Source: Amphiscolops sp. MND2022
Taxonomy: Eukaryota
Reading direction: 5' to 3'
Length of the DNA stretch: 63,742 nucleotides
Assembly: GCA_964187785.1 (NCBI GenBank)
Contig: CAXLNC010001113.1
Coordinates: 124,001 to 187,742, forward strand
Shown: positions 3,001 through 50,276 of the stretch, one piece after another
Layout of the letters: each line of letters opens with the position of its first letter
How positions within the stretch are numbered: position 1 is the first letter of the stretch
Program-made: the position numbers and the translations under genes
The notes under the pieces: model-generated
Told to the model about the DNA's origin: nothing
The model's database searches: none
Seen by the model: the letters and a program-made list of their open reading frames with translations, nothing else

Positions 3001-3100
3001 TCGACAGTGTGGAAGAATATCGCTGCCTCTTCCGGGCTAACATCGTCCATTGGCATCTTGTTGCGCTCGGTCTGATAAAACCAGTTGCCTCGCGCATTGC
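1..3100 (-). CDS. Copy A polyprotein segment, missing from the ORF track: Gag end, CCCH (2658-2714), protease (2475-2498 DTG), 2OG dioxygenase (~1500-1950), MazG-like (~760-1190), degenerate MazG repeat
   Basis: My manual translation of the minus strand is stop-free from ~3100 to base 1 (CIRFFRGNCTRGEACQYGH; LLDTGANA; HKDYRNHEEYLNYTINFG; EHRV; RFSVTLF; EEVREIEEA..AELVD; KHGDNMRK; GKLIKPYDY). Confidence 0.88.
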
Positions 3101-6074: not shown

Positions 6075-6331
6075 TAACTTGTGACAACGAGATTCTGGCT
6101 ATGTGCTCACAACGATTGTTCCTATGATGTACCACTATCCTCGATATCCAGGCGTCACGCTCCTGCACTTCCTCGATTGGAAGTCTAAGCCCACATGGCT
6201 TGAGGAGGTGACAGTTCGTCATGCAAATGGATTCAAGTCAAGGACAGAACCTCTCCTGCACCTGACTCTGCAACAAGCTCTACAGATTGCCCGAACCCCA
6301 AGGGGCTTGCAAAGAGAGAGGCCCATTGACA
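6075..6331 (-). repeat. 5' terminal/LTR-like leader of copy A
   Basis: Begins TGTCAATG and shares blocks (TGGGGTTCGGG, CAGGTG, TCAAGCCATGTGGGCT, GGTACA) with the B and C leaders; the LTR 3' boundary cannot be defined. Confidence 0.6.
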
Positions 6332-9745: not shown

Positions 9746-10094
9746 GTGTGTTTGTACCTATATGGCCGGTCATGAGGATGCCGGGGCAATGACCGGCCAT
9801 ATAGGAACAAACACACCCAAATTTGTACCCCCTCGCAGGGGGACGACCACCCATTGGACCTACTTAAACGGGGATGTGCAAATTCGGGTGTGTTTGGAGC
9901 GCCTAAGGCCACCAATGGGCAGCCCGCATCCGTCACCTCATGTGAAAACACTCTGCAACTTCAAACCCCAAATTTGGTCAGAAATTATCACATCACGTGA
10001 TGCCGAAAGTACTTGTTTTTAAGGCTCAAGGACGGCATGTGATGTGATAATTTTGGATTCTTGGCGTTTTTTTGAGCAGATTTTGGCCGGAAAG

Positions 10095-10411
10095 TGTCAA
10101 TGAATGCTCTCTCCTAAACCCCGGTTTTGCGTCATTGGGGTCGGGATACAGAGTGTTGAGCAGAGACATGACTGCTGACAGGCAGGTGAGGATCTGTCTG
10201 GTTTTGTTGCATGTGACCTTTACATGCATTCGCCCTCACAAGCCATTTAGGCTAAGTCTCGGTCAACAGACCGAGGAGAAGGGCGGTACAGATAGCCACA
10301 AGGAAGGTTAGCATCATCACCAGATTGATAGCAGCATCAACACGCCTATTGAGCCATATCCTAGATAGACAGTAGTGACATCCAGCCCTCTGCCTTTCCC
10401 TGTGTGGACTG
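10095..10411 (+). repeat. 5' terminal/LTR-like leader of copy B
   Basis: Homologous to 56307-56620 and 6075-6331; the upstream flanks are unrelated among the three copies. Confidence 0.65.
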
Positions 10412-13400
10412 ATGGCAGAAGGGTCTGGTCACCTTCCAAATCCCGCAATGGGCAGAGACCTCGTGGCTGGCCATATTCACAAAGACCGTTATGGTCGCAG
10501 CCCGGCACCAGCATCGAGCCATCGCCCTGTAGGGAGAAAAAGAGTCCAAGCATCAGCAGATAGATCTCCTAAGCGGGTAGAACCTCCAGAATTGCCCAGG
10601 TTGAGAGCCCTAGAGGCACAAGCAGCAGCAATCCCTATCTCTAGTTCCGCGGCATCCTCCACCTCTCCCAGAAGCGGATCTTCTCGTGTCAATCCATACC
10701 CAATTGGGGAGGCTACCGAGAGCTCACCCTTGAGATTGTGCCCTCTGTGGCTACCCAAGCTACCCAATCTTGGGAACAGGGAGGATCATTGGATTTGACC
10801 CCGATAAGGAACGAGACTAGCCCTACCACTCCTTCCAATAAAACCATACAGGTTATGAGCCCAAACCTGGGTCAGGGATTGGCATCAGGTTCGACTCAGG
10901 TTGAAGAGGGAGAGATAGAGATGGATACCGCAATGGCCAGAGCTATTCTTCAGTCATGGTCGGAGACAAGGGCTGAAGATGGAACAGTGCAGAGAACATA
11001 CACTCAGTGTGCTCGTGAATGGCCTCTGTCAGAAACGGATTGAAGCTGCACTAAATGTTCTGAAGCGTGCTTGTGAGTATCTCCATGAAGGCATGATGCA
11101 GATGGGAAAGACAGTTGAACAGAAGGCCAATATTCCCAGTGTGGAGGCCGCTGTCAGAGAACTTGCTCATCACACTCAAGAGGTCCGTAATGGAGTGCAA
11201 CGAACAGTGACTCGCCAGACTGAGTTCTCCAACAGGCTGGACAGCATGACAGAGCACAATCAGGAAGCTCGTGGTCGTATGGAGGCATTGTCAGCCCAGG
11301 GTGATCAAGGAGGACGAGAACACATGGCCCTCGCTGTGGAGTATAGGCACTCAATAGACGAGACTCAACGAAAGGTGATTCAGTTGGGGAGCCTTATGGA
11401 ACATTCCCAAGTGGACACTCAGAGACTCGACAAGGGTCTGACTGATCTACGAGAAAATGTCTTCAATAATAGTGTGGCTATTGATCACCTAAAGGAGGAC
11501 ACGCAGCGCGAAGTAGCGAAGCTGAGTACCCTGAGTGGTCAAGCAACAGACATGTCAGTCTATCAACGGCATGCTGCCAGTCACGATCAAGCGCTTACTC
11601 AGTGCCGTACTCAGCTGACAACTCAGGCGCAGCGACTCGATGAAAGTGAACAACACCTTCGGCGTCTCCAACAGGAAGTGGCAGGCTTGACGGGTGAGCC
11701 GACTCCTCGAGTGGAGCAGGGCATCCCGAATCGAGATCCAGAGTTGGCCATCCGCCTGTCACAGCTGGAGGAAGGATTGAAGACTCAGCAAAGGGCGATG
11801 AAGCAGCTCAAAAGGGACAATGCTGAAGACGCCAAGGAGGTGAAGCAGTACCTAGACCAGGTACATGACCTTCTCACTACGACCCTCGAGGCAGTTGGCT
11901 CTACAACCTCCGAGCGGGCTACAGGAGGGATGACGAGGTTGTCCAAGGTGGCCAAAAGAGGAGATTTTAGAGTTGACGTGGAAGACAGTGACTTCTGCAA
12001 GGTGGGAGAGATTGTCCTTATTGGGGGTCAGGAGGCGAGAACAGTCATGGGTAAGAGTAGCCTTATCTTCAAAGTGCCACTGGATGGGGAATATCCCGAA
12101 GGAACGACTGTGAGAACCCTGCGGGAGAATGAATTTCTTCAGCTGGACGGTGAGAATGTGTATGTCTATGCGCAGGATTCAGAGGGACAGAGTCATATGG
12201 TGTGTGGTGTGGACTTGATGCATCGAGCACCCCCTGAGTGGGCAGAAGAAAGGGATGATGTCCAGGACCAAGTCTATTCAGATGACCTGGATCAACGGGT
12301 CCAGAGGGCCGTAGACGCTAGAATGGCGACTCCGAGGCCAGTTGTCTCGGGAGCAGGAGGACCGATGGTACCACCATGGACAGCATCCCATGCCCATGAA
12401 TGGAGTGCCTCGAATGGCCAGACAAAAATTCCTGTGTTGCCTTCTTTTGGAAAGAAGGAGGAAGGTGAGCCAGCGCAGGAACAAGGAGCATCTTATCAAG
12501 GCTGTGTCAAGCAAGAGGAGGATGTTAAGTTCGAGTCCCTGGATGACTACTTCTGCAGAGGAATGGACTCATCAGGACCAGCTTCATGGGATAAAATCCT
12601 TCGAGAAATGGAGCAGAATTCCCTTGAAGACGTGGGCACCATGAATTATCGAGAAGGAGTACGAGAAGAGAAATGGGGAATGTTGGACTTGAAGAGTATA
12701 CAGTTCCCAAAGGTGACCGCTCAATCGGTCAAAAGGGCGACCTTACTGCAGTACTTTGAGGTGGACTTTATCCGAGCTATGGGTATTATCAGCCCTGCAG
12801 CGGCCACCTATGCCAAAGCAGTGATTGCTGGTGTCCACAGAGATCTTCCTGTCTATCGCAAGCGAGATATGAGCACGACTGTCCGCGACTGGACCGGGAA
12901 GATGGTTGAAGAACTGTGGCATACACGCGCTGAAGCAGCGGTGAACTTAGCTTTACAGACAGCAGGGGTATCAGCAGAATCCTTGGAGATGGCGCGAATG
13001 CTAAGGCATGACCCACCAGTGAGGTTGATATTGATGACGGCTTATCATCGGCTGCTGCCCTATCAGTCTAGAGAAGAGGAAGAATTGCAGCAATATGTGA
13101 GGGAACCCCAGGTGGGCGATCAAGGAGCAGTGTCTACTTTTCAGAAGCTTCAGGCATGGAAGAGTGCTGGTCGTCGCTTAAGGCAGATGGGAGGTATGCT
13201 GCCCGGTATTCCTGCCTTGATGACTGCCTTTGACAAGATTTTAGCGGCCTTCAACATTCACAATCAGAGAGGGAATTGGTTCTACCAGACGGAGAGGAAC
13301 CTTCTTCCCATGGTGGACGCGACTCCAGGCCAAGCTGCATTCTTCTTCCACACCGTCGAGGTCAACTTGAACCAGGTCACGACAATGGTGAGCTATCTCC

Positions 13401-13658
13401 CACCTTCTGCTGCGAAAATCCATGCTGTGGATGCAAAGCCCAAGGCAAAGCCTAAGCCAAGGGCAAAGGCTAATAGCTCAGGGGGGGGGAACATCTGCTC
13501 CCACGAGCCCACCGCCTTCCTCTCCAGTGAAGACGGAAGGTCCGATTCCAAAACCTAATGCCCAGGTGGCCGAAAAGGGAGGCTCACCCGGAAAAGGTAA
13601 GAGCAAGGGAGCGGGATCAAGCACTGATAGACCGCCAGTGAACAAGAAGGGCCAACAG
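10412..13658 (+). CDS. Gag-like protein with Ser/Pro-rich N-terminus, long coiled coil (~11100-11900) and conserved core; frameshifts near 10735, 11030 and 13485
   Basis: ORFs 10412..10798, 10738..11043 and 10979..13558 together match the single copy C ORF; position upstream of the zinc finger and protease. Confidence 0.75.
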
Positions 13659-13715
13659 TGCATTCGGTTCTACCGAGGAACTTGCTCACGAGGTGACCAA
13701 TGTCAGTATGGACAT
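13659..13715 (+). other. CCCH zinc finger (C-x7-C-x5-C-x3-H) at the nucleocapsid position
   Basis: CIRFYRGTCSRGDQCQYGH, conserved in all three copies. Confidence 0.85.
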
Positions 13716-13869
13716 ATTCTTGGGACAGATGGAAAGCCCTTGAAGATCGCTCCGGAATTGCTGGAAAGGTATGACCGGCATTCAGCAGCGAGACGGGAGG
13801 GCAAGAAGCCAGAGACGACCGTGACGGCACAGATGCTTATGCTGAACGCCATTGAGCAAGCCGACTCTT

Positions 13870-14190
13870 GTTGCTTCTGCCTGCTGGATACTGGCGCGAA
13901 TGCCTTGGTACTTCCTCGTAAGGGAGAGATGTCTGGTACTGAAGCTCATTGCACTGTCCCGGGTGGCACCATGGTTCCCGGAACAGTTGTCCAGACACTC
14001 CGGTATGGGGAGGATGACTATCACGTTGTGGCTATTGAGGGTGCGTCTCCACTGATGCCACTATCATGGCTGATCTTGTTGGCAGGATGGTCCTACATGC
14101 CAGTGGTGAAGGATGGGAAAATGGAGGTGACGATCGCATCCCCGAGGGGACTGTCTGTGACGCTTGTCGAGCGTTCAAAGATGCATTATA
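13870..14190 (+). CDS. Retropepsin-like aspartic protease domain
   Basis: CLLDTGANALV, with the catalytic DTG starting at 13887. Confidence 0.88.
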
Positions 14191-14399
14191 TCGACAAGGC
14201 CACCTTCTTCAATGTCCTTCAGGACGCTTGGAAGCGTTGTAAGGCCTCGGATGGCATGGACTATGACCAGCTCAAGAGAGCCCTGTCAATGGAGACGCCC
14301 CATGTGGCAAGTGCAGTGAAGATGGAGCGACCCTCCTCTATCCGTTTCTTGGACATGAACATGAGCCGCAAGGGCTATATGAGGAGGATTGTGGATCTC

Positions 14400-14870
14400 C
14401 AAAGAACAATCGAGTCTATGACTTGGCCAAGTCAGAACAATAGGCCAGGACATGGCCTCTTCTTGGGAGCACCAATAGGGGATATGAGAAAGGATGTGTT
14501 TCCAAGAAGACCTTTGACGCGCAGTATACGCAGATCTTGCGGAGGGTACGTGCGCTGGCCAGATGTTGCCAAAAGACAATCCAGTATATGGGCGTATATC
14601 TGACAAAGTTGGAGTCTGGTCAAGGACTTAATCAGCACAGGGACTTCCGCAACCACGAGAAGTATCTCAACTACACCATCAACTTCGGTCACTATACGGG
14701 TGGACACTTAGAGGTGCTTCGTGACGATGATTGGGAGTCCTGTGCGGCACCGTTGATCTGGGTTGAGTTCACGGCGGACATCATCAAGCATCGGGTAAGA
14801 GAGGTGACTTCAGGTGTGCGATATTCAGTGACCCTGTTTACTCCAAACCACCTGGAGAGGCTGTCCGATG
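14400..14870 (+). CDS. 2OG-Fe(II) dioxygenase domain (TET/JBP-like motif pattern)
   Basis: HRDFRN (14636), FGHYTGGHLEV, KHRV (His at 14789), RYSVTLF (14819); all conserved in copies A and C. Confidence 0.82.
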
Positions 14871-15169
14871 ATGAGGATGAATCTTGAATCGTTTGGTTTC
14901 CCAGTGGACCAGTATGCTGAAAGGAAGACCACCAGTGTCTCTGCCGTGAAAGGCCCCACCGTTGAAGAACTTGACACTTCCGGTGAGGTGGAGATTCCCT
15001 CGACAGCGAGGATTGAGGAGATCCTAGAGAACTCCGAAGAAGCGCTCACTGTCCAAGCGGTGGAGAAGCAAGTCAGAGCTCTATCAGATCCATTGGACTC
15101 CCTGAGTGGTCAGGTGCCACGACCAAGCGCATCTGAGAATCGATCTTCGCGGCTGACTTTGGAGACATG

Positions 15170-15620
15170 TGCCTTGATGACACGGGACTTCAATACCGCG
15201 ATGGGTCTGCCGAAGGGCGAACTTCCTCAGTGCGTGGGTCAAGACAGGGGTTCCGTATATGGACAAATGCTGCGTGAAGAAGTTCAAGAAGTGGAAGAGG
15301 CCGTAGCACGAGGCATTCTTCATGAAGTGCTGGCCGAGTCCGTTGATGTCCTTTACCTTGTGTTCAACTTGCTGCAGGAGTGCGGCCTTGAGAGAGCTGT
15401 TGATCCAGCCTTCTCGCTGAAGCACGAAGACAACATGAAGAAGCAGCATGAGACAGTGACGCACCTGGCTTGTACCAGGAACGCATATGCTCAGTCTACT
15501 GGGAAGTCTGAAAAGGAGTTGGCGTTCACTGTCTCCAGAACTGAAGGAGGTAAGTGGCTCTTGTACTCCCAGGGCAAGCTGATCAAGCCTCATGACTATG
15601 TCTCGAGTGACTTTGACTCC
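15170..15620 (+). CDS. All-alpha MazG/DR2231-like NTP pyrophosphatase (dUTPase-like) domain
   Basis: EEVQE-x15-ESVDVLY (ExxE..ExxD), KHEDNMKK, GKLIKPHDY. Confidence 0.78.
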
Positions 15621-15799
15621 GTTGTTAGGATGCTCGCAGATGAGGAGTCCGTGAATGGACAAGAGAATGCGCAGAAGGCTCACTCATCAGGACCTCACAC
15701 CACTCAGTATACTTTCGCAAGTGTGGGTGTCCAAGTGGCCGCTGCCTCCATTGACTCCTCGCAGCGCACCTCAGGTGGTGGACAAAATCACCATGGATG

Positions 15800-16260
15800 G
15801 CAACCAGCATTGATGACTTCTTTCATGTGGTTAGCCAACGTCACTGGTGAGTTCATCTACCAAATGGGTGAAGACATCACTACAGTCCCCAAGCGGGCCA
15901 GGCCACGGTTGGTGGATGACCCTTTGGGAATGATGGAACAGGCACTTGTTGATTTGCGAGTCGCATGGGGTATGCATGATAGCTCAGCCATGTTGAGACA
16001 TCTCACTGTGTTGACCTACTTTGCGGTCCAGATGACTACTAGTCTCCATCTACACCCTTACCTTTCATCGACTTTCCTGTGGATCCACGAGTGGCAAATG
16101 GGGAAGATCTATGAGGACTTTGCTCCAGCAGAGAGCGCCTGGGAGATGATGCAGAATCTTACTATGAAAGAGATCCGAAATGGCTATGTCCTTGTGAACA
16201 GCGATTCCAGGGTCTTGGGTGACGACATTCTGGAGGAGAAAGCAGATGTGGTGTTGACCA
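15800..16260 (+). CDS. Degenerate second MazG-like repeat lacking the acidic metal ligands
   Basis: EQALVDLRVA / LTYFAV / FLWIHEWQMGK / GYVLVNSDSRVLG parallel EEVQEVEEA / VLYLVF / FSLKHEDNMKK / GKWLLYSQGKLIK. Confidence 0.5.
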
Positions 16261-16403
16261 TACCTGTTGAGAATCTGCTCATGTTGGTCCCCTACAAGAC
16301 TCATCTGCCGTTTGTGGGTATGACAAGTATTGGACAGTCGCCCTTAGTGGCAGAGGACATGGCTCACAAGGCCAACTCCACGGAGTTGGTGTCCCCTTCT
16401 CTA

Positions 16404-16445
16404 TGACAAGTACGGGCCCTCCTTAGGTCTCCTGAGGAGGTGCCC
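16404..16445 (+). promoter_or_regulatory. Putative stop-codon readthrough signal: TGA-CAAGTA, 7-nt spacer, hairpin 16414-16445
   Basis: Upstream and downstream ORFs are in the same frame; an identical arrangement is present in copy C. Confidence 0.8.
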
Positions 16446-16454
16446 TTTGATGCA

Positions 16455-16583
16455 TGCGCAGTGTGCTTTCGCCCATGTGCCCTCTGTGGCCCGAAGCATT
16501 GCATGCTGTGTTACCGTCGAATTCACCCATGGTGTGCCACGTCCCCACATGACGATGCACATCCCATTGTGTGCAGATTTTGC
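16455..16583 (+). other. PHD-like zinc finger with an extra CxxC, N-terminal to the integrase
   Basis: CAVC..CALC..CMLC-x4-H-x2-C-x12-CRFC. Confidence 0.7.
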
Positions 16584-16899
16584 GCCTCTTCCCCTGGTGG
16601 ACGTACTCATTTTCAGGTGCACAATGTTCAGATGAGACAGCGCTTTGTGATCTCTGGGTGCGCTACAGCCATGCCTGAGGTGCTTGAAGAACCCGCCATC
16701 ACGGTGCACTCCTCCGACAAGGACATTGCCAGTGGAGATGAGCATCCCTCTGTGGAAGAGCTACCTGCTGCACGGTGCAATCCAGTTCCCTTAGTGGACC
16801 GAATGGTGTGCGTCCAGGCACATAGGTCAAGCCAGACTGCACCTTTTATAGTTCCGGATATTCACCGTGTTCTTGAAGGAACAGGCATGTTGGAGTGCC

Positions 16900-17750
16900 C
16901 AGACCACAAATTGGACCATGGTGTTCCGGATCCTAAATGTGACTATTGTAAAAGAGCTCTGGGTCCCTTATACAGACATTCGGCCCTGAAGGAGTCAAGG
17001 GAGATTCCGATCCTCACATTTGATTTCTCAGGACCGCACCCCTCCACAGTGCATCCTGCCAAGCAATTGATGGTTATTGTTTGGTGCCTGAGGGAGGTGC
17101 GACTGATTTGGGCAATGGGCGTAGAAAATAGAGATGATCCCCATGTGGTCGCCGGATTACAGGTTGCTCTTGATGATTTGTCCAGCTTAACCGGAGGTTG
17201 CCGAGCACCTGTCCTGCGTCTTCATTCCGACAAAGCAAAGGAGTTCCTTGCGACAAGTGTGCGAAAATTGTTGCGTTCTCATGGCACACGCCAGACCACC
17301 AATTCCGGGTACGATCCTGCCGCAAATGGCATAGCTGAGCGATGGGTAGGTATTATCAAGGTCCGTGCAACGGCACTGCTGGCAGAGCATCGACTTCCTC
17401 CGGACTATTGGACATATGCCTGCAAATGGGTTGCCTATGTGCACAACCATCGTGTTCTGAGCATTCAGCTTAATGCCAGTTATCCACTTTTTGGAGATGT
17501 GGTGGTCGTACATCGTTTCTTGAAGAAACCACCGAGCTTTGAGGATCGTGGGATCACTGGAGTTTGTTTAGGACGCAATCCGTTAGTTTCTGGAGGGGTG
17601 ACAGTGGGAACGGTCTCGGATGGCCTTTTTAATGTGATTGTCACTGCCAAGGTCCGAAAATTGGGGGAGCGTCGTCCTCAGCGATGGAAGCTTCATGTGC
17701 ATCCTACGGAGCCTCGAGCGGCCGCCTATGTGCGCAATGATGGGGAGATC
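16900..17750 (+). CDS. Integrase (HHCC plus DDE core)
   Basis: DHKLDHGVPDPKCDYC; TFDFSGP; LHSDKAKEF; NGIAERWVGIIK. Confidence 0.92.
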
Positions 17751-19181
17751 CGATGGAACCTGAACGACTTAGACGTGGCCACTGTGGAAGAACTGGAACC
17801 AGAAGGTGCCGTTGAAGTGCAAAATCTCCGTTCTCTCGGAATGGGCTGGGCATGGTATGTGAATGACCTCAGCAAATATCTTCCGGATGCGGAGACTCTA
17901 GCCGCAATGGCCCCCACAGATGACGATGTCGTGGGTGTGGATCATGATGTCCCATTGAGTGAGATTGCTCTGGAACCTGAGAGGGTGGATGTGCCCGTTG
18001 AGATCGACCCTTATACAACTCCACTACCTTTTCCTCATGCCGCGCCTGGCCCAGCTGAATATGAGACACTTGCCGGTATGGCACCAGATTTGCTTCCTCG
18101 TTCACAAGATGTGGATCTGGTCGTGGCGGCAATGGATATTCCTCTAGCACCAGCTCTACGTGCTCACTTGAAGTCATGGACGCGCGAAGACCTGAATGTA
18201 CGAGTGTTTCAAGGTGTTCGTCGTGGAGGACCTCCTTCTCACCGCGTCTGGTGTCGTGAGACATATGAGATGAATACTGGCAAGCTCATTGCGCGGGAGT
18301 TCTACAATCCTGATCAATCTTCTTTGGTTCGTTTGCCCACACCGGCACTTCCAGATTGTACACCGATGAATGCCGACCGTCGATCGATTCGCAGTATCTT
18401 CTGGTATTCTGAGACTGATGTCTTGCCCTCCCACCTCTCCCGACTTGTTCCTGGCCGTGTTCTGGCTTCTGCGGCTCCTGCGGGCGGACCTCGCCTACCC
18501 ACCTCGGTCCGGGGGGAGGGTGGTGAGCCGCATATGGCATATGATGCTCAGAGCCAGCAACGTCAGGACTTGACGCCAGATTCCGGGGGAGCCTCAGCGA
18601 AAGGGCAAGAGTCTCCTACCGAAGCTGGAAGCGGGGGAGCTGTGGGCCTCGACCAAGAAGAAGTTCTCTCACAAGATAGCTTTGAGACTGCCATTTCTCA
18701 GGGCTACCGAACAGAGGATGAAGAGGGAAATTGGGATTCCTCCGTTTCCTTGGTGCACCTCGGGTGGTTGAACGTAGAGCTGAAGTCTGACGACTGGGTC
18801 AAGGTAATGGATCAGCCACCGGTCCGAATCATGAAAATCACAATGGATGAGGATAAGAACCGCAAGAACACGAAGAAATTTGTGGTTGAGGAGAATGACC
18901 AAGGAACCTCGGTAAAGACCTATTGTGTTACTGGTCTCGATACGAGTAAGCAACTGGAACTGGTGGAGGCATCGTTTCAGTTGAGATGCAGGATCTTCGA
19001 ATTCAATGCGGTGTCCTTTGCGGCCATTCCTTTGGAACTGGTGCCCCTAGAGGTCGACTATGTTGATGCGTTGTCAAAGCAAGACGTACCGGACTATTTT
19101 GCTGGGCCGTCAATGGCTAAGACACTGACACAAGAGACCCGGGTGGTATTTGGACCGGAAAAGGGGGAGTAGAAAGCAGCA

Positions 19182-21101
19182 ATGCTGGCTGAACTACAAT
19201 CTTTTGCCAAACTGGATGTGTATGAGGCAGTTTCCCGTGCGGACGTAGGCCACCAAGAAATACTTCCTGGCAGGCTGGTTCTTGTGGTGAAACCCAATCC
19301 AGAGGGCGTGAAAGGGAAGAAGAAGGCAAGAATTGTGGTGTGTGGGAATTTCCAGACTATTCATCAGGATGAAATGACCTCTTCAAAGACTCCTTCGTAT
19401 CCTATGCTGAGAATGCTCTTGTCCTTAGCTTCATATCAAGGTTGGCCGATAGAGACGTGGGACGTATCAACAGCTTTCTTGTACGCCAGGTTGTATGGGG
19501 ATAGGGATACGGACCTTGATGGTCAATACATCTATATGAGGCCGCCAAAGGTCATTGAGAAGCTTGGTCTGTTACCGGAAGGGACGATATGGAAGTTGAA
19601 GAAGGCGCTTTATGGATTACGTACTTCACCGCTTGCTTGGGAAGTTGAGAGAGACAATACCCTTGCACAGCTCCAATGGGAAGTTGAAGAACGATGGTAT
19701 GGTTTGGTTCCTGCAAAAGGCAATCCCTGTCTATGGGCGATCGTTGAGCTTGATGCGGGAAATCATTGTGTGCCCGGTGTGGCCAGGCCATCTGCACAGA
19801 CTCTGAGAGCCGAAGAACCAGGGCAGCCGTCAATGGCCAAGAAGTATCGCACAATAGGAATTCAGACAGAAGGTCAGGAGAAACCTGTGAGGTTGCTAGG
19901 AGGACTGGTCATGTATGTGGATGACCTGTTGCTGGCAATGCCGGAATGGCACTTAAGACCTGTGGTGGATCTATTGTTAAAGAAGTATGTTATGAAGCAG
20001 TCGGGTGTTCTCCCTAGTGGGCCACAGAAACAGGATGTGCAGATTGGTTTCCTTGGATGTCGAATAACCAGAGACCAGTATGGTATCATTTTCTGTGACC
20101 AAGAAAAGTACATCCAACACTGCATGCATGAGAATGGGTTTGTTGGTGCAACGCAACAAGTGACGTTGAAGCCCTTTCACCGACCACCCGAAGTGGATGA
20201 GCGACTGCCTGAGGAAGTCTTGTCAGAAGAAACCAAAAGGAAGCATGTTGCAGAGTGCCAGAAGTACATAGGCCAACTGATGTGGCTGGCCACAAGGACA
20301 AGGCCAGACATCTCAGCTGTCCTAGGCATCTGCGCTTCCTTCATATTAAAGACTCCTCAGAAAGTGGCCAATCATTTAGTTGATTTGTGGAGATATGTGT
20401 GGACAACTCGTAGGTATGCAATGTCTACCCTTTCTCCCGCTATGGGCCCATCAAGTAGTTCTCCTCTTCCCGCAATGGGCTCGACAACAGGAGACCAACA
20501 TGGAAGCGATGTGGGTGAGAACATACGTCAAGATGGTTGCCTTGATGGCAGTGAAAGATTATCAATTGACAGACCGGAGTTTCACATCCATGCTTATACC
20601 GATGCCAGTTTTGCTACGTCAGGAGGGAGGAGTCGTTCGGGATTTCTTGTCTGTCTGGTTCAACCTGAAACGGGCGAGTATTCTGTTTTACAATGGTCCT
20701 CGAGGAGACAAACAATCACAGCGTATTCAGCGCCTGAGGCTGAGATAGTGGCAATGTCTGAGGGCATCATGACATCTATCTTGACGTATGATGCAGCAGA
20801 GTTTCTGGGTGTGTGTGTGGGTATAACTCCATTCTTGAAGATCCCAATGAAGACAGACAGTGACACTGGCCTGAAACAGTTAAAGAATCAGTCCATTGTC
20901 GTCAGGAATCGACCTCTCACCAAGAATTACAGCTATTTGCATGATGTGTGCTATGGGACACTGCTCCATCCCCCGTGCATTGAACCTTCATTTCTGCCGG
21001 GAAAGGTACAGAAGGCTGACGGAATGACCAAGATTTTGGGACGGAACCTTCAAATGGAGTTCATGGCCATGTTAGGTATGCGCTCCCCTTCTTACCTCTA
21101 A
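19182..21101 (+). CDS. Copia-type reverse transcriptase plus RNase H; preceded by a copy-specific TAG at 19170
   Basis: KARIVVCGNFQ, WDVSTAFLY, LKKALYGLRTSP, YVDD; RNase H AYTDASFA, WSSRRQ, SAPEAEIVAM, TDS, KADGMTK. Confidence 0.95.
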   Translation: MLAELQSFAKLDVYEAVSRADVGHQEILPGRLVLVVKPNPEGVKGKKKARIVVCGNFQTIHQDEMTSSKTPSYPMLRMLLSLASYQGWPIETWDVSTAFLYARLYGDRDTDLDGQYIYMRPPKVIEKLGLLPEGTIWKLKKALYGLRTSPLAWEVERDNTLAQLQWEVEERWYGLVPAKGNPCLWAIVELDAGNHCVPGVARPSAQTLRAEEPGQPSMAKKYRTIGIQTEGQEKPVRLLGGLVMYVDDLLLAMPEWHLRPVVDLLLKKYVMKQSGVLPSGPQKQDVQIGFLGCRITRDQYGIIFCDQEKYIQHCMHENGFVGATQQVTLKPFHRPPEVDERLPEEVLSEETKRKHVAECQKYIGQLMWLATRTRPDISAVLGICASFILKTPQKVANHLVDLWRYVWTTRRYAMSTLSPAMGPSSSSPLPAMGSTTGDQHGSDVGENIRQDGCLDGSERLSIDRPEFHIHAYTDASFATSGGRSRSGFLVCLVQPETGEYSVLQWSSRRQTITAYSAPEAEIVAMSEGIMTSILTYDAAEFLGVCVGITPFLKIPMKTDSDTGLKQLKNQSIVVRNRPLTKNYSYLHDVCYGTLLHPPCIEPSFLPGKVQKADGMTKILGRNLQMEFMAMLGMRSPSYL

Positions 21102-21279
21102 TGGTGTGTCTCGTCAATTACACGTAATGTGTCGCATGTTGTGCTAAGCTGTGTTTCCTTGGTGGACTGTGTTTGAGAGAATGACTGATGAGATTGAGGC
21201 TGTTCCCGTTATGGGCTAATATTTGTGTGTCTGTCTGGAGCCGTTTACAGGAAAGAGGATCAAGGGTGGCGGTGCGATT

Positions 21280-24200
21280 ATGTCCCACAGGGGGGAGGGA
21301 GCCATCTATCAGGAGGGCCAAGACCGGCCTTCCCAACCTGTTGCCTCTAGTCGGCAAAGGACAAGCACAGCTGGTGCAACTGAGATGGCCCCGAGTGGCA
21401 TTTCTACAGCATCATCCACGCAACCGTCACCACCTCTTCCAACCAGTGACCTACCTAAGGAAGTGCCGCATATGGCAGAAGGAAGGTCACAAATGACCGT
21501 AAAACTCGATCAAGCAGTAGATGCGCGACAATTAGCTGCGCATGATGTGGTACCACGGCTGAGAATACAGCTTGAGGAGATCTTTGAGCCTTCCCCTGTG
21601 GACCAGGTCGACTTATCTCAGACTGTCAATAGTCGAGTGATTATCATTCATGGCCCCACTGGAACAGGAAAATCGACAGTGATCCCATGGGAAGCTATGA
21701 GATGGCTGGAAGAACACTGTTCCCGCAGAGGACGCAAAGCTGGTAGGGTGATTTGTTCACAGCAGAGGAGGAAAGTTACCATCTCCTTGGCCCAGGAGGT
21801 CCGACGTAGACATGGCGAAGTTGGAGTCTCCACAGTGGGCTATCATGTGTCAAGAGACCGCCAAATCACGGATGACACTAGATTGGTTTATCTCACTGAG
21901 GCTATTGGTGTCTTCTCTCTGCTGAATAACAGATCGCCCGGTGTGGCCAATCCGCTAGCAATTGTGATAGCAGATGAAATCCATGAAAGGACCATGTACA
22001 CACAGATGATCATCGGCTTGGCTCGAGATCAGATGTCTCGTAGCACCGGAATGGTCTTGATCCTCATGTCTGCGACAGTTGATATGGAGGAATTGAGAGA
22101 TGCCCTTCCAGGAGCTCGGGAGATTGAAATTGGGAAGCATGAGTTCGCAGTGCACCGCTATTACCTCGAGAGGCCTGTGACTCAGTCTACCAATATTCTT
22201 GAGCAGACAGCACGACTAGTGGTGACCCTGCACCATCAGCATGGCACAACAGATCTGGTGGAGGGTGTCCCGAGCGGCCAATTCTGCGACCATTTCTTGG
22301 TATTTTGTCCAGGCAAGCCTCAGATGAGGGTTCTGGCTTCTATCTTGATAAGATGGCAGGAATTGGGATATACTCGGGGACTGGAAATTGTCCAAATGTC
22401 GAGTGGAGAGGACCCTCGGACCTGGGAGTACTTTGACAAAGCAGTGACAGACTATCCCGTAATGGGCCGTGATCGACCATACTACATGAGTCCTCATGGC
22501 ATCCAGAAAATGAAGCCAAACGCGGGCAAGAATGGTCCACAATATCCTCCCTATGCGGACAAGGACATCGTGACGCAATTATCCCATGTGGTCAAACGGA
22601 AAAGGAAGGTGGGGCTGACGACCAATGTCAACCAGACCGGAGCCACTCTGACTTCGGTTGCTGTGGTGATCTCGACGACAGGCGTCAGGACATGCTCCCC
22701 CAACTTGAGATCCAAAGAGGAGGTCAATTGCATCCAGACGGTGTCCGTGAGTGACCTGATTCAACAGGGAGGAAGGGCTGGACGTGTATGTCCCGGAGAA
22801 CATTATGTGATGGCTTCAGAATCCCAGGTGGTCGGACAGTTTCGAGGAGCAAGTGCACCAGAGCTGCTCAATGCCGATGTGGCACCGCTCATTAGCATTT
22901 GCAAGAGGATCAACATAGATCCACTCAACTTTCCGATCTTGAACATGCCGGATGAGAAGGTGTTGGGAGCCACCACACAGCGAATGAGAATGCTGGAGTT
23001 GCTAGACGATGACGGCAATCTCACCCATCTGGGACAATCACGACTGGTGTTGGACTATACCCCAGAGTGGGCCCGCTTTATTGCCAAGGCATTGGAGTAT
23101 GGAGTGTCGGAGGGAGCTATCCGAATTGCGGCGGTGCTATGCCGAGAAGAAGATCTATACACCCCACATGTTCGTGAATCTCTTTCCCATGTGGACGGTG
23201 ATGTGATGACAATCCTCCATTTGGTATGGTTGGCTGAAGGAATCTTGAAGAGGTTTCACATCACACGAGTCCAGGCACTATCCAACCATGATGCCGCAAA
23301 GGCAACCCTTGAGCGGGCAGGCCTACAAGTCAAAGGGGTGATGCAAGTCATGCAGAACATTGAGCAGCTGCGTGAGTCAATTGCAAACTCAGATCTCCCG
23401 CGTGGGCCCTTGAGGAGATCCTCGGACAAATGCTATGCGACCCTGCTGGTGCATGCTTTGTGGGAGGGGTTCTACATGAATGTGATGATCAAGAGCTTCA
23501 CTGGACAGTACGTGAGCCCTACCTATGGAGGCGAGTGGAGCATCAGCAAGACCACACTGCAATATGCACCCTTGGTGGTCCTCCCGTTGAAGAAGACGAT
23601 CATAGATGGGAACCCTTTCCTCCAGTGGATCACCCCATTGCCAGTTGAGTGGCTTGTCGAACGAGATTGGTGGATCCAGACACATTGGGAGGATAATGAC
23701 TGTCGCATGGTTTACCGCAATCTGGTCGCATGCCCGATATTGCGAGACATGGTGAGCACGGCAAGGCTGTACCCTGGTGGTCGAATCAAGATCATTGAGC
23801 TGAAGGCTATCCCACCAGTGGAAGAAAAGCCGCCAATGGCCGTGACCATCGATAATTGCGCAGTCATGTTGAATAGGTACCTCCTCACAGCCCGAGAGCT
23901 GGAAATCATCTTCGACTTGGTCTCGAGTGACTACTTGGTAACTGCATATGTGTCAGGCTCATATGTCTTGAACAACACGGTCAAGAATGAGGTCACAATG
24001 CAGGTTCTCAAGTGGACAGTGAGCACTTCCAAGTCCAAGAAGCCGTACAAACTGAACACCATTGACAAGCCATCTGTCCAGACACTTGGCGCTTACTCTT
24101 TCATTCCCCGTGAGGACTATCATCAGGAAGCCTGGTTGAGTGGTGGTAGAGAAGTGCAGCTTAAGTCCAATGCGGAAGACCTGGCCTTGTCGCGGATGTG

Positions 24201-27200: not shown

Positions 27201-27463
27201 TAATCCACTCTTCATAGCGGCAGGCCGGAAGATTGTGGACTCCCTTTTCACAGGAGCAAGCTCGAAGAAGGAATCAGACTTGGGTGACAGAATGGAGTCT
27301 GCCTTCAATCTCAGCTTCTGGGAAAAGGAGGGAGCTTTCGACTGGTCTTGGCTCGGTTTGGATCTCGTGAATGAGCGCATGACTGAGGAGCTGTTGGTGT
27401 CCCTTGAGTGGAGTTGTTATCGAGAGTCGGAGATCCAGTTGATACAGACGTTCCTGGACATCT
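21280..27463 (+). CDS. Intronless DEAH/RHA (HrpA-like) SF2 helicase ORF2, >2000 aa, C-terminus truncated
   Basis: GPTGTGKST (21652), DEIHER (21973), MSAT, FCPGK, TTNVNQTG, QQGGRAGR (22762), HA2-like LTHLGQ..LDYTPEWARFI; C2H2-like CAWC..H..H (~24400); low-complexity linker ~25600-26450. Confidence 0.9.
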
Positions 27464-27817
27464 ATAAAGTCCACCTCAAAGTACTGCAGTAAGGTCGCCC
27501 TTTTGACCGATTGAGCGGTCACCTTTGGGAACTGTATTTCTTCAAGTCCAACATTCCCCATTTCTCTTCTCGTACTCCCTCTCGATAATTCATGGTACCC
27601 ACGTCTTCAAGGGAGTTCTGCTCCATTTCTCGAAGGATTTTATCCCATGAAGCTGGTCCTGATGAGTCCATTCCTCTGCAGAAGTAGTCATCCAGGGACT
27701 CGAACTTAACATCCTCCTCTTGCTTGACACAGCCTTGATAAGATGCTCCTTGTTCCTGCGTTGGCTCACCTTCCTCCTTCTTTCCAAAAGAAGGCAACAC
27801 AGGAACTTTTGTCTGGC
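27464..27817 (-). mobile_element. Inverted near-identical duplicate of copy B gag segment 12417-12771
   Basis: The reverse complement matches 12417-12771 with only a few differences. Confidence 0.9.
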
Positions 27818-45414: not shown

Positions 45415-45597
45415 GGTTACACAACCACCCTTGAACCTCTTCTCCTGCAAACGGCTTCAGACAGACACACACACCTCAGCCCATAACGGGAACAACTCAC
45501 ACATTATCAGACTCTCTTCTCATCACTCTTTGTCCACCAAGGGAACACAGCACAGCACGACATGAGACACATTACGTGTAATTGATGAGACACATCA

Positions 45598-50273: not shown

Positions 50274-50276
50274 TCA
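50235..50276 (-). promoter_or_regulatory. Putative readthrough signal of copy C: TGA-CAACCA, 7-nt spacer, hairpin 50266-50235
   Basis: TCT CTG TGA CAA CCA CGG GCC CTC CTC AGG CCT TCT GAG GAG GTG CCC. Confidence 0.8.

What the first reader, a model, noticed from the sequence alone, without database searches (positions are those of the whole stretch)
15170..15620. All-alpha MazG/DR2231-type NTP pyrophosphatase in an LTR-type element
Seen: ExxE-x15-ExxD (EEVQE..ESVD; A: EEVRE..ELVD; C: EEIQE..ESID), then H-x-D-N-M-x-K and GKLIKPxDY, in all copies. Established: these match the MazG-like DR2231 family pattern (HxSNMxK, GKxxKP), which includes dUTPases. Retroviral dUTPases belong to the unrelated trimeric beta-fold class. 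Inference: a convergent solution for keeping dUTP or another non-canonical dNTP out of reverse transcripts.
Basis: partly seen in the sequence, partly recalled or inferred. Interest (0 to 1): 0.8.

Follow-up and report, generated by a model that had tools for sequence, protein, structure and literature searches.

The report
MazG-type nucleotide cleaner in retrotransposon
A giant copia-like jumping gene carries, inside its polymerase polyprotein, a well-conserved enzyme domain of the bacterial and phage DR2231/MazG type that probably destroys unwanted DNA building blocks such as dUTP, a job that retroviruses do with an unrelated enzyme.

Summary
The three motifs (EExxE-x15-ExxD, HxDNMxK, GKLIKPxDY) occur in all three copies in the window and are far above chance. 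The domain (copy B, 15129-15668) passes Pfam PRA-PH, matches a phage pyrophosphohydrolase family (E 4e-12) and folds with high confidence (pLDDT 94). All 37 best PDB fold matches are DR2231, an enzyme reported as dUTP-specific.

The carrier is a Ty1/copia-like LTR element of about 22 kb. Its order is gag-like ORF with a CCCH finger, protease, 2OG-Fe(II) oxygenase-like domain, MazG domain, a probable degenerate second MazG-like domain, integrase, reverse transcriptase, then a DEAH helicase ORF of about 3,300 aa. LTRs of 745-790 nt are shown by comparing related contigs; the window holds only 5' LTRs.

The domain is under strong purifying selection (dN/dS 0.03-0.07). All catalytic columns are conserved in 23 of 23 relatives, and the domain is present in three deeply diverged lineages.

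The role (clearing dUTP or another non-canonical dNTP for reverse transcription) is inferred and not tested. I found no paper linking MazG to retrotransposons. I rate it a new variant of a known kind. The host is unidentified, and all relatives come from one ENA assembly.

The parts
10093..10838 (+). Copy B, 5' LTR
   Evidence: Homology with copy C, L001 and the 3' LTR of L004 starts exactly here and ends about 745 nt later. It begins TGTCAATG like all seven LTR starts aligned.
10848..10870 (+). Copy B, 23-nt block just after the 5' LTR, conserved in both lineages (putative primer-binding region)
   Evidence: Alignment A7: the block is identical or nearly so in B, C, L001, A and L002, and absent after the 3' LTRs of L003 and L004.
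10412..13558 (+). Copy B, gag-like ORF1 (coiled-coil rich, no Pfam family); broken gene, given as one part
   Evidence: ORFs. Against the 1115-aa relative in L001 the whole length aligns, with about 9 stops in the aligned frame.
13422..16406 (+). Copy B, polyprotein gene: CCCH finger, protease, 2OG-oxygenase-like domain, MazG domain, second MazG-like domain; broken gene, given as one part
   Evidence: Alignment with the single-ORF relatives P0001 and P0003. About 2 frame changes and 1 stop against the 856-aa relative. The MazG part is open and complete.
13659..13715 (+). Copy B, CCCH zinc finger (nucleocapsid-like position)
   Evidence: Pfam zf-CCCH E 9.5e-4; motif coordinates. In L001 the finger lies at the end of the gag-like ORF.
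13881..13904 (+). Copy B, aspartic protease active-site motif (LLDTGANA)
   Evidence: The same motif lies in copy A at 2475-2498.
15129..15668 (+). Copy B, DR2231/MazG-type NTP pyrophosphatase domain (the finding); intact
   Evidence: Motifs at 15276-15347, 15423-15443 and 15573-15599.
15810..16403 (+). Copy B, conserved C-terminal domain of ORF3, probably a second, catalytically degenerate copy of the same fold
   Evidence: hhalign of A9 against the stand-alone DR2231-like profile A5: probability 71%, E 3.6e-5, 124 collinear columns, acidic motifs not kept. dN/dS 0.04-0.07. No Pfam hit.
16440..21101 (+). Copy B, integrase and reverse transcriptase gene (ORF4 plus ORF5); broken gene, given as one part
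   Evidence: rve E 5.4e-5 and RVT_2 E 8.3e-19. It is a single 1496-aa ORF in L001. One in-frame stop in copy B.
21223..27492 (+). Copy B, DEAH/RHA-type helicase ORF6, 3'-truncated (2089 aa here; about 3,320-3,390 aa in relatives)
   Evidence: Pfam DEAD. Nearest named proteins are DHX29, Prp22 and Prp16 at 20-25% identity. Full lengths from P0228 and L004. The second part has no match in the window.
27464..27817 (-). Inverted fragment of ORF1 abutting the truncated 3' end of copy B
   Evidence: 98% identical to 12417-12771 in inverse orientation.
3..3125 (-). Copy A, one open 1041-codon frame running off the window edge: end of gag-like ORF, CCCH, protease, 2OG-oxygenase-like domain, MazG domain, second MazG-like domain
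   Evidence: no stop in 1041 codons. No breaks against the 682-aa relative in L002.
1446..2009 (-). Copy A, 2OG-Fe(II) oxygenase-like domain (HxD, distal H, RxS)
   Evidence: Pfam 2OG-FeII_Oxy_3 E 1.4-2.9e-4 on relatives, below the cut-off. AF2 pLDDT 59.8, pTM 0.62. The top 50 PDB fold matches are all 2OG oxygenases.
615..1154 (-). Copy A, DR2231/MazG-type domain; intact, 52% identical to copy B
   Evidence: motifs 1017-1088, 921-941, 765-791. dN/dS 0.045-0.068 against L002 and L003.
2990..6074 (-). Copy A, gag-like ORF1; broken gene, given as one part
   Evidence: About 2 frame changes and 1 stop against the 1313-aa relative.
5556..6331 (-). Copy A, 5' LTR
   Evidence: Matches L002 5262-6038 and the 3' LTR of L003 at 20099-20888.
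41200..56620 (-). Copy C, 3'-truncated and decayed copy with all four genes broken; 5' LTR at 55876-56620; MazG region within 51041-51577
   Evidence: Counts: ORF1 1 frame change and 2 stops; polyprotein 3 frame changes and about 9 stops; IN-RT 2 frame changes and 1 stop; helicase 3 frame changes and about 7 stops, with only 68% of part 1 present.

Best explanation
The stretch encodes a catalytically competent all-alpha NTP pyrophosphohydrolase domain of the DR2231-like branch of the MazG/HisE/dimeric-dUTPase superfamily. It is built into the gag-pol polyprotein of a roughly 22-kb Ty1/copia-like LTR retrotransposon, between the protease and the integrase.

Shown:
- The fold, the family and the full set of metal-binding and C-terminal motifs.
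- Strong purifying selection.
- The same position in the polyprotein in several lineages.
- The LTR-retrotransposon nature of the carrier.

Inferred:
- Being translated with protease, integrase and reverse transcriptase, the domain would end up in or near the particle in which reverse transcription takes place.
- There it would hydrolyse dUTP to the monophosphate and pyrophosphate, using two divalent metal ions held by the EExxE and ExxD carboxylates. The substrate could be another non-canonical dNTP; the specificity is unknown.
- This would keep the unwanted nucleotide out of the cDNA. It is the same job that unrelated trimeric dUTPases are thought to do in non-primate lentiviruses, betaretroviruses and some fungal Gypsy elements.
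- The conserved domain that follows it is probably a degenerate duplicate. It would supply the partner subunit that enzymes of this fold normally obtain by dimerising, so the active unit would be a single chain.
For: Motifs:
- Present in three copies and far above chance.

Family and fold:
- Pfam PRA-PH is above its cut-off.
- phrog_671 'nucleotide pyrophosphohydrolase' E 4.4e-12 over the whole domain.
- phmmer against 1.84 billion representatives finds stand-alone 150-180 aa proteins aligned end to end.
- hhalign of the element profile against the stand-alone profile: probability 99.6%, E 2.6e-24. The stand-alone profile hits DR2231 at E 6e-23.
- AF2 pLDDT 94.3, pTM 0.81. The 37 best PDB fold hits are all DR2231 (E from 8e-6, target-normalised TM 0.63-0.72); other MazG and HisE structures follow only at E > 0.1.
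- The best match among viral models is a putative pyrophosphohydrolase, TM 0.72/0.75, rmsd 2.1.

Conservation:
- E50, E51, E54, E70, D73, D101, M103 and K105 are identical in 23/23 element relatives and K150 in 24/24.
- dN/dS is 0.03-0.07 at dS about 1, in two lineages.
- The domain sits in the same place in the A and B lineages and in a third, 29-36% identical, decayed lineage.

Carrier:
- Protease, integrase and RVT_2 in that order, LTRs and a polypurine tract.

Partner domain:
- hhalign probability 71%, E 3.6e-5.

Background from papers:
- All-alpha NTP pyrophosphatases are house-cleaning enzymes whose metal is bound by four acidic residues (PMC10014863).
- DR2231 is reported to act exclusively on dUTP (title of Mota et al. 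2016, as cited in PMC7575645).
- Trimeric dUTPase domains occur in fungal Gypsy elements at varying places in Pol (PMC2864245).
Against: - No activity or substrate was measured.
- The element-only profile does not reach DR2231 directly by sequence; its best PDB hit is HisE 1yvw at E 0.026. The sequence link is therefore transitive.
- The domain carries a roughly 40-residue helix and beta-hairpin insertion that DR2231 lacks. It has D where relatives have S in HxSNMxK, and N where the stand-alone family has H in the N-terminal EFH motif. Specificity could therefore differ from DR2231.
- Whether the domain is cleaved out, packaged or even translated in vivo is unknown.
- All three window copies are truncated or broken somewhere.
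- The host is unidentified.
- The second-domain homology is only moderately supported.
Confidence: 0.6

Rival explanations
1. The pyrophosphatase works with the adjacent 2OG-Fe(II) oxygenase-like domain as a nucleotide or base modification module, and its main role is not cleaning. One possibility is that it removes one pyrimidine dNTP so that the cDNA is made with, or without, a modified base such as 5-hydroxymethyluracil. Another is that it deals with a host whose pools contain such a nucleotide.
For: - The oxygenase-like and MazG domains are neighbours in one ORF in all three lineages.
- Structural relatives of the MazG domain include proteins of phages, among them Delftia phage PhiW-14. 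From my own knowledge that phage makes hypermodified thymidine; this is a lead, not a test.
- 5hmU marks Copia elements and appears to silence transposons in a dinoflagellate (bioRxiv 10.1101/2023.11.30.569493).
Against: - The host is not identified, so there is no evidence that its DNA carries modified bases.
- The oxygenase model is of low confidence (pLDDT 59.8). Its best fold matches are AlkB-type, NMAD-1 and prolyl-hydroxylase enzymes, and no TET/JBP base hydroxylase is among the top 50.
- The closest solved relative of the MazG domain is reported as a plain dUTP-specific enzyme.
Confidence: 0.12
2. The domain is kept for a role other than protecting cDNA. It might deplete a nucleotide second messenger or a dNTP as counter-defence against the host, or it might serve as a structural or regulatory part of the polyprotein.
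For: - Phage members of the same family are widespread.
- A dUTPase-related region in bovine immunodeficiency virus is reported as critical for replication although the protein lacks dUTPase activity (PMC4261571, title and abstract).
- The element also carries other unusual accessory domains: an oxygenase-like domain and a giant helicase.
Against: - Every catalytic column is conserved in 23/23 relatives, which argues for catalysis.
- No feature points to a particular signalling nucleotide.
Confidence: 0.1
3. The domain is a passenger: a host, bacterial or phage gene fragment captured by chance and now decaying, with no role for the element.
For: Copy C carries the domain as a pseudogene, and the degraded third lineage (L005, L006) holds only remnants.
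Against: - dN/dS is 0.03-0.07 at dS about 1 in two lineages, comparable with the rest of pol.
- The domain is present in lineages whose synonymous sites are saturated.
- All motifs are intact in copies A and B and in L001-L003.
- The decay in copy C affects all of its genes alike.
Confidence: 0.03
4. It is a true HisE (phosphoribosyl-ATP pyrophosphatase of histidine biosynthesis), as the best Pfam name suggests.
For: PRA-PH is the only Pfam family above its cut-off. HisE 1yvw is the only PDB sequence hit of the element-only profile.
Against: - The fold search puts DR2231 at E 8e-6 and HisE at E 0.16.
- The domain has the C-terminal HxxNMxK and GKxxKP motifs shared with DR2231 and the stand-alone family. 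The match to HisE chain 1yvw (115 aa) covers only the EExxE-ExxD part.
- The setting is a retroelement polyprotein. No histidine-pathway gene turned up among the ORFs scanned.
Confidence: 0.01

Closest known systems
DR2231 of Deinococcus radiodurans (MazG-like all-alpha NTP pyrophosphohydrolase; PDB 2yeu, 2yf3, 5hva and others)
   Same: - All-alpha four-helix core.
- EExxE and ExxD metal-binding carboxylates.
- HxxNMxK and GKxxKP C-terminal motifs.
- It is the top fold match: the 37 best PDB hits are all DR2231.
   Different: - 17-24% identity, and the sequence link only runs through intermediate stand-alone relatives.
- The element domain has a roughly 40-residue helix plus beta-hairpin insertion between the two C-terminal motifs.
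- It has D instead of S/A in HxSNMxK.
- It lies inside a eukaryotic retroelement polyprotein and is followed by a degenerate duplicate. DR2231 is a free-standing bacterial protein.
Phage and stand-alone 'nucleotide pyrophosphohydrolase' family (phrog_671; JGI names 'HAD superfamily Cof-like phosphohydrolase' and 'NTP pyrophosphatase (non-canonical NTP hydrolase)'; BFVD A0A218MM90)
   Same: - End-to-end alignment that includes the insertion.
- E 4.4e-12 to phrog_671.
- TM 0.72/0.75 and rmsd 2.1 to the best viral model.
- 22-30% identity to proteins of 150-180 aa.
   Different: Those are separate small genes of bacteria, phages and some giant viruses, one of them fused to a nucleotide kinase. 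Here the domain is part of gag-pol in a eukaryotic LTR element. None of the top 50 viral fold matches is a reverse-transcribing virus.
Trimeric (beta-fold) dUTPases of non-primate lentiviruses, betaretroviruses and fungal Ty3/Gypsy elements
   Same: A dNTP-pyrophosphatase domain embedded in the Pol or Pro polyprotein of a reverse-transcribing element, at variable positions. The presumed role is lowering dUTP during cDNA synthesis (PMC2864245, PMC4261571).
   Different: It is an unrelated superfamily; house-cleaning NTP pyrophosphatases fall into four structural superfamilies (PMC10014863). No trimeric dUTPase family was hit in any ORF of this element. The carrier here is copia-like, not Gypsy or retroviral.
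AlkB and ITPase/HAM1 accessory domains of Potyviridae, and the AlkB ORF of giant orchid Ty3/Gypsy elements
   Same: Rare accessory 'nucleic-acid hygiene' domains (a 2OG oxygenase and a non-canonical NTP pyrophosphatase) fixed in polyproteins of viruses or in large LTR elements (PMC9249622, PMC9289625). This element has one domain of each functional kind side by side.
   Different: The pyrophosphatase there is of the Maf/HAM1 fold and the hosts are plants. Here it is the all-alpha fold. The oxygenase subfamily here is unresolved.
Tandem-domain MazG proteins (E. coli, Mycobacterium tuberculosis)
   Same: Two similar all-alpha domains in tandem on one chain (PMC10014863). This parallels the active plus degenerate pair proposed here.
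   Different: The homology of the second domain here is only moderately supported (probability 71%), and its acidic motifs are not kept. I found no direct sequence link to those proteins.

Membership tests
All-alpha NTP pyrophosphohydrolase superfamily, DR2231-like branch | All-alpha helical-bundle fold | tested here: met
   AF2 pLDDT 94.3, pTM 0.81, five long helices. Foldseek: the 37 best PDB hits are DR2231, probability 1.00, target-normalised TM 0.63-0.72.
All-alpha NTP pyrophosphohydrolase superfamily, DR2231-like branch | Metal-binding acidic motifs EExxE and ExxD on neighbouring helices | tested here: met
   Present in copies A, B and C. E50, E51, E54, E70 and D73 are identical in 23/23 element relatives. 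They align with the corresponding DR2231 residues.
All-alpha NTP pyrophosphohydrolase superfamily, DR2231-like branch | C-terminal HxxNMxK and GKxxKP motifs | tested here: met
   HEDNMKK and GKLIKP align with the same motifs of DR2231 and of the stand-alone family. The S-to-D change is specific to the element family.
All-alpha NTP pyrophosphohydrolase superfamily, DR2231-like branch | Significant sequence similarity to curated family models | tested here: met
   Pfam PRA-PH 33.5 bits against a cut-off of 21.3. phrog_671 E 4.4e-12. hhalign probability 99.6%. Pfam MazG (16.8 bits, cut-off 22) and NCBIfam gave no call for the window domain itself.
All-alpha NTP pyrophosphohydrolase superfamily, DR2231-like branch | Dimeric or tetrameric assembly that completes the active unit | tested here: inconclusive
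   No multimer model was run. A probable degenerate second domain follows on the same chain (hhalign probability 71%), which could replace a partner subunit.
All-alpha NTP pyrophosphohydrolase superfamily, DR2231-like branch | Hydrolysis of (d)NTP to (d)NMP and pyrophosphate; dUTP specificity for DR2231 | not testable with these tools
   Only inferred from conserved catalytic residues and from the reported specificity of DR2231.
Ty1/copia-type LTR retrotransposon | Gene order protease, integrase, reverse transcriptase, with an RVT_2-type reverse transcriptase | tested here: met
   DTG motif at 13881-13904. RVT_2 68.6 bits against a cut-off of 31.6, downstream of rve. rve itself is below its cut-off (23.8 against 32.6).
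Ty1/copia-type LTR retrotransposon | Long terminal direct repeats | tested here: met
   No complete pair lies inside the window. The 5'-terminal 745-790 nt recur 140-180 nt after the last ORF on related contigs: L004 14968-15713 is 96% identical to L001 6243-6989, and L003 20099-20888 is 79% identical to L002 5262-6038. Boundaries are sharp and all LTRs start with TG.
Ty1/copia-type LTR retrotransposon | Polypurine tract before the 3' LTR and a primer-binding site after the 5' LTR | tested here: inconclusive
   A purine run lies directly before both 3' LTRs. A 23-nt block conserved across lineages follows the 5' LTR. It was not matched to any tRNA, and no tRNA gene was found in the window.
Trimeric dUTPase (the retroviral kind) | Match to the beta-fold dUTPase family | tested here: not met
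   No dUTPase family appears among the Pfam hits of any ORF of the element or its relatives.
HisE (phosphoribosyl-ATP pyrophosphatase) | Short single-domain protein of about 90-115 aa whose closest structures are HisE | tested here: not met
   HisE 1yvw reaches only Foldseek E 0.16 against 8e-6 for DR2231. The domain has a C-terminal extension with the DR2231-type motifs.
2OG-Fe(II) oxygenase superfamily (neighbouring domain) | Double-stranded beta-helix fold with HxD...H iron triad and a basic residue that binds 2-oxoglutarate | tested here: inconclusive
   HxD, a distal H and RxS are conserved. Pfam 2OG-FeII_Oxy_3 scores 22-23 bits, below the cut-off of 27. The AF2 model is of low confidence (pLDDT 59.8). 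There are 167 fold hits at E <= 1e-3, and the 50 listed are all 2OG oxygenases. The subfamily is unresolved.

The most novel reading that the evidence does not exclude
The oxygenase-like domain, the active plus degenerate MazG pair and the giant DEAH helicase might together form an element-encoded system that controls the chemical make-up of the element's own RNA or cDNA. It could, for example, exclude or install a modified pyrimidine, or erase host-imposed marks, in order to escape host silencing. On this reading the MazG domain is one enzyme of a pathway and not a lone house-cleaner.
Probability: 0.12. Interest if true: 0.85.

Novelty: new variant of a known kind. Interest (0 to 1): 0.65.

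Why it matters
- Extra enzymatic domains are rarely fixed in LTR retrotransposons (PMC9289625).
- Reverse-transcribing elements that carry a dNTP pyrophosphatase were so far known with the trimeric dUTPase fold. A second, unrelated superfamily in the same kind of position would be an independent case for the idea that control of the dNTP pool matters for reverse transcription.
- It would also be a case of a mostly bacterial and phage enzyme family recruited into a eukaryotic retroelement.
- This element also carries an oxygenase-like domain and a helicase ORF of about 3,300 aa in a 22-kb LTR retrotransposon. That makes the family a useful object for studying how retroelements enlarge their coding capacity.

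Tried and rejected
MazG domain:
- phmmer of the whole 512-aa ORF3 against PDB sequences gave 0 hits.
- Profiles dominated by element sequences reached only HisE weakly. The link to DR2231 needed the stand-alone relatives and the fold search.
- NCBIfam gave nothing for the window domain.
I then used only open pieces.

Host identification:
- Rfam and tRNA scans of the window were empty.
- The window's reverse-transcriptase ORF is not on record by exact look-up.
- Cluster look-ups gave no names or organisms.
- The only clear host exon, a cation-efflux/SLC30-like exon at 8338-8637 (-), scores 69 bits (E 2.8e-18) against the SLC30A4 chain 9jj3, its best PDB match. That does not place the host.

Element ends and distribution:
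- No paired LTRs were found inside the window, because copies B and C are 3'-truncated and copy A runs off the edge. This was solved with related contigs.
- The search for distant relatives of the oxygenase-like domain returned element copies only, and its profile had no PDB sequence hit.
- A scan of JGI metagenome contigs for the MazG domain found nothing.
- Literature searches for MazG together with retrotransposon or reverse transcriptase found nothing relevant. The DR2231 paper PMC3162430 is not held.

Readings rejected: a true HisE, and a decaying passenger gene. See the rival explanations.
Full report
**1. Observation**

- EEVQE followed 15 residues later by ESVD,
- HEDNMKK,
- GKLIKPHDY.

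A six-frame regular-expression scan places them at these coordinates.

| Copy | Strand | EExxE-x15-ExxD | HxDNMxK | GKLIKPxDY |
|---|---|---|---|---|
| B | + | 15276-15347 | 15423-15443 | 15573-15599 |
| A | - | 1017-1088 | 921-941 | 765-791 |
| C | - | all three within 51041-51577 | | |

In copy C the first motif is in a different frame from the other two and the stretch holds stops. Residue-shuffled six-frame translations give 0.015, 0.005 and 0 matches on average.

**2. What the domain is**

Sequence evidence:
- Pfam assigns ORF3 residues 106-174 to PRA-PH (E 5.9e-8, 33.5 bits, cut-off 21.3). MazG itself is below its cut-off.
- The 180-residue domain (15129-15668) matches PHROG 671, 'nucleotide pyrophosphohydrolase', at E 4.4e-12 over residues 13-172.
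- An exhaustive phmmer search of 1.84 billion representative proteins gives 177 hits at E <= 1e-3. Besides fragments of the same element family, there are many stand-alone proteins of 150-180 aa that align end to end at 22-30% identity. Where a source named them, they are called 'HAD superfamily Cof-like phosphohydrolase' or 'NTP pyrophosphatase (non-canonical NTP hydrolase)'.
- A profile of element sequences only, compared with a profile of stand-alone sequences only, gives hhalign probability 99.6%, E 2.6e-24, 149 columns.
- The stand-alone profile hits DR2231 in the PDB at E 6e-23; the mixed profile does so at E 2e-21.
- The element-only profile does not reach DR2231 by sequence. Its best hit is HisE 1yvw at E 0.026. 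The sequence link is therefore transitive.

Structure evidence closes the gap:
- AlphaFold2 on alignment A3 gives pLDDT 94.3 and pTM 0.81.
- The 37 best Foldseek matches in the PDB are all DR2231 chains (E from 7.7e-6, target-normalised TM 0.63-0.72). Other MazG, HisE and iMazG structures follow only at E > 0.1.
- Against predicted viral structures the best match is a 'putative pyrophosphohydrolase' of an uncultured virus (E 5e-9, TM 0.72/0.75, rmsd 2.1). It is followed by phage proteins, several named 'DR2231-like', and two mimivirus proteins. No reverse-transcribing virus is in the top 50.

Differences from DR2231:
- The model shows a helix and a beta-hairpin (residues 110-147) between HxxNMxK and GKxxKP. 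DR2231 lacks this insertion; the stand-alone and phage relatives share it.
- The element family has D where relatives mostly have S in HxSNMxK.

**3. Is the domain maintained?**

- In the element-family alignment, E50, E51, E54, E70, D73, D101, M103 and K105 are identical in 23 of 23 rows and K150 in 24 of 24.
- Nei-Gojobori estimates within lineages show strong constraint.

| Region | Comparison | dN/dS | dS |
|---|---|---|---|
| MazG domain | B vs L001 | 0.062 | 1.37 |
| MazG domain | A vs L002 | 0.054-0.068 | about 0.9-1.0 |
| MazG domain | A vs L003 | 0.045-0.053 | about 1.3-1.4 |
| MazG domain | L002 vs L003 | 0.032-0.039 | about 1.0-1.1 |
| Reverse transcriptase core | B vs L001, B vs L004 | 0.014-0.016 | about 0.7-0.8 |

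- Between the A and B lineages synonymous sites are saturated, while the proteins stay 52-58% identical.
- A third lineage, 29-36% identical and decayed (L005, L006), keeps the order ORF1, oxygenase-like domain, MazG, integrase/reverse transcriptase, helicase.
- The domain was therefore acquired before these lineages split and has been kept by selection on replicating elements.

**4. The carrier**

The window holds three copies:
- B: + strand, 10093 to about 27463.
- C: - strand, 56620 down to about 41200.
- A: - strand, from 6331 to the window edge.

Gene content, in order:
1. A gag-like ORF that is coiled-coil rich and ends in a CCCH finger.
2. An aspartic protease with a DTG motif.
3. A domain with an HxD...H...RxS signature.
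4. The MazG domain.
5. A further conserved domain.
6. Integrase (rve).
7. Reverse transcriptase (RVT_2, 68.6 bits).
8. A very large ORF beginning with a DEAH/RHA-type helicase. Its nearest named relatives are DHX29, Prp22 and Prp16 at 20-25% identity.

In copy A one open frame of 1041 codons runs from the end of gag through the protease, the oxygenase-like domain, MazG and the C-terminal domain. On a related contig the corresponding ORF exceeds 2046 aa.

Integrase upstream of an RVT_2 reverse transcriptase is the Ty1/copia arrangement.

Evidence for LTRs:
- No LTR pair lies in the window.
- The point where copies B and C and contig L001 begin to align is sharp (10095 = 56620 = L001 6243). The same holds for copy A and L002 (6331 = 5262).
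- The same 745-790 nt recur 140-180 nt after the last ORF on contigs L004 (96% identical to the 5' end in L001) and L003.
- All seven LTR starts read TGTCAATG. A purine run lies directly before both 3' LTRs. A 23-nt block conserved in both lineages follows the 5' LTRs.
- The gag-like ORF starts inside the 5' LTR.
- Joining the coordinates of L001 and L004 gives a length of about 22 kb.

State of the window copies, as approximate counts only:

| Copy | gag-like ORF | Polyprotein | Integrase-RT | Helicase ORF |
|---|---|---|---|---|
| B | about 9 stops in the aligned frame | 2 frame changes, 1 stop; MazG part open and complete | 1 stop | Part 1 open; part 2 missing because the copy ends at an inverted 355-nt fragment of its own ORF1 (98% identity) |
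| C | 1 frame change, 2 stops | 3 frame changes, about 9 stops | 2 frame changes, 1 stop | 3 frame changes, about 7 stops; 3'-truncated |
| A | 2 frame changes, 1 stop | Open as far as the window reaches | Beyond the window edge | Beyond the window edge |

**5. Neighbouring domains**

The oxygenase-like domain (copy A, 1446-2009):
- It gets Pfam 2OG-FeII_Oxy_3 only below the cut-off (E 1.4-2.9e-4, 22-23 bits against 27).
- Its AF2 model is weak (pLDDT 59.8, pTM 0.62).
- Even so, 167 PDB fold matches have E <= 1e-3, and the 50 listed are all 2OG-Fe(II) oxygenases: NMAD-1, PHD2, AlkB and ALKBH7, with TM 0.32-0.48.
- I take the superfamily as likely and the subfamily as open.

The domain after MazG (copy B, 15810-16403):
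- It has no Pfam hit.
- It aligns collinearly with the stand-alone DR2231-like profile (hhalign probability 71%, E 3.6e-5, 124 columns), with the acidic motifs replaced.
- It is as constrained as the first domain (dN/dS 0.04-0.07).
- It is probably a degenerate duplicate.

**6. How it most likely works**

[quoted passage not shown] The all-alpha group includes dimeric dUTPases, HisE and MazG, and binds its metal through four acidic residues (PMC10014863). DR2231 is reported as a two-metal-ion hydrolase acting exclusively on dUTP (title of Mota et al. 2016, cited in PMC7575645).

Shown here:
- The fold.
- The acidic and C-terminal motifs.
- Selection on the domain.
- Placement between protease and integrase.

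Inferred:
- The domain is made with the replication enzymes and hydrolyses dUTP, or another non-canonical dNTP, at or near the site of reverse transcription. This limits misincorporation into cDNA.
- The degenerate second domain provides the partner that such enzymes normally obtain by dimerising.

This parallels the trimeric dUTPase domains found at varying positions in Pol of fungal Gypsy elements and in some retroviruses (PMC2864245, PMC4261571). It also parallels the ITPase/HAM1 and AlkB modules of potyvirids (PMC9249622) and the AlkB ORF of 25-kb orchid Gypsy elements (PMC9289625).

Substrate choice is the weakest step, for three reasons: the insertion, the S-to-D change, and an N in place of the H of the N-terminal EFH motif, all of which separate the element domain from DR2231.

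**7. Rivals**

- A modification module acting together with the oxygenase-like domain (0.12).
- A counter-defence or non-catalytic role (0.10).
- A decaying passenger gene (0.03; contradicted).
- A true HisE (0.01; contradicted).

**8. Distribution and novelty**

- All relatives that could be traced to a contig lie in one ENA assembly, ERZ25074608. All family hits in the searchable protein collection carry ENA as their only source.
- None was found in JGI metagenome contigs.
- The host is an unidentified eukaryote. The window has assembly gaps, microsatellites and an SLC30-like exon.
- Full-text searches found no paper that links MazG with retrotransposons or reverse transcriptase in eukaryotes. 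The orchid survey of extra domains in LTR elements mentions neither MazG nor dUTPase.
- I rate this as a new variant of a known kind: a known strategy (a dNTP pyrophosphatase in a retroelement polyprotein) carried out with a different superfamily, in a copia-like element of unusual size and content.

- One search printed the lengths of open segments in the broken ORF3 region of copy C.
- One search printed motif coordinates per frame for copy C. Places of breaks could be narrowed down from either output.

Noticed in passing
window 1446-2009 (-), copy A; also P0001, P0003, P0013 and L005 5962-6318: A 2OG-Fe(II) oxygenase-like domain (HxD, distal H, RxS) lies directly upstream of the MazG domain in the same ORF, in all three element lineages. 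Fold matches are to AlkB, NMAD-1, ALKBH7 and prolyl hydroxylases. The model confidence is low and the subfamily is open.
   Followed up: partly
window 15810-16403 (+) and 30-548 (-): The conserved C-terminal half of ORF3 aligns collinearly with the DR2231-like profile (hhalign probability 71%, E 3.6e-5) but lacks the acidic motifs. It is probably a degenerate tandem duplicate of the MazG domain.
   Followed up: partly
window 21223-27492 (+); P0228; L004 4605-14785: After pol comes a very large ORF (about 3,320-3,390 aa in relatives) that starts with a DEAH/RHA-type RNA helicase. The remaining 2,500 or so residues have no Pfam family. On one relative (L004) the ORF is split into 2061 and 1316 aa.
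   Followed up: partly
window 27464-27817: Copy B ends at an inverted 355-nt fragment of ORF1 that is 98% identical to its own 12417-12771. This could be a recent rearrangement, a remnant of a closely related inverted copy, or an assembly artefact.
   Followed up: partly
window 10093-10838 and 13659-13715; L001 6243-6989 and 6595-9942: The gag-like ORF starts inside the 5' LTR. Its nucleic-acid-binding finger is of the CCCH type, not the usual CCHC type.
   Followed up: partly
window 10848-10870; same block in copies C and A, L001 and L002: A 23-nt block just after the 5' LTR is nearly identical in two lineages whose flanks have diverged. It is a candidate primer-binding region and was not matched to any tRNA.
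   Followed up: no
window 9100-9336 and 36371-36609; also 9555-9826: A 239-nt inverted repeat pair (95% identical) lies upstream of copy B and 27 kb away. A palindromic stretch at 9555-9826 matches its own reverse complement. Both are unrelated to the element and unexplained.
   Followed up: no
window 8338-8637 (-): A host exon encodes the first transmembrane helices of a cation-efflux (SLC30/ZnT-like) transporter (Pfam E 8e-21; best PDB match SLC30A4). It is cut by an assembly gap at 8138-8337.
   Followed up: partly
L005 4515-10809 and L006 4374-7012: A third, deeply diverged and decayed lineage of the same element family (29-36% identity in the MazG and oxygenase-like domains) lies in the same ENA assembly.
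   Followed up: partly
window 62245-63460 and 37164-37343 / 39792-39947: There are long arrays of short repeats (period about 10) rich in AC, and two inverted blocks of a 10-nt repeat that encode low-complexity peptides. They look like ordinary satellite or microsatellite sequence of the host.
   Followed up: no
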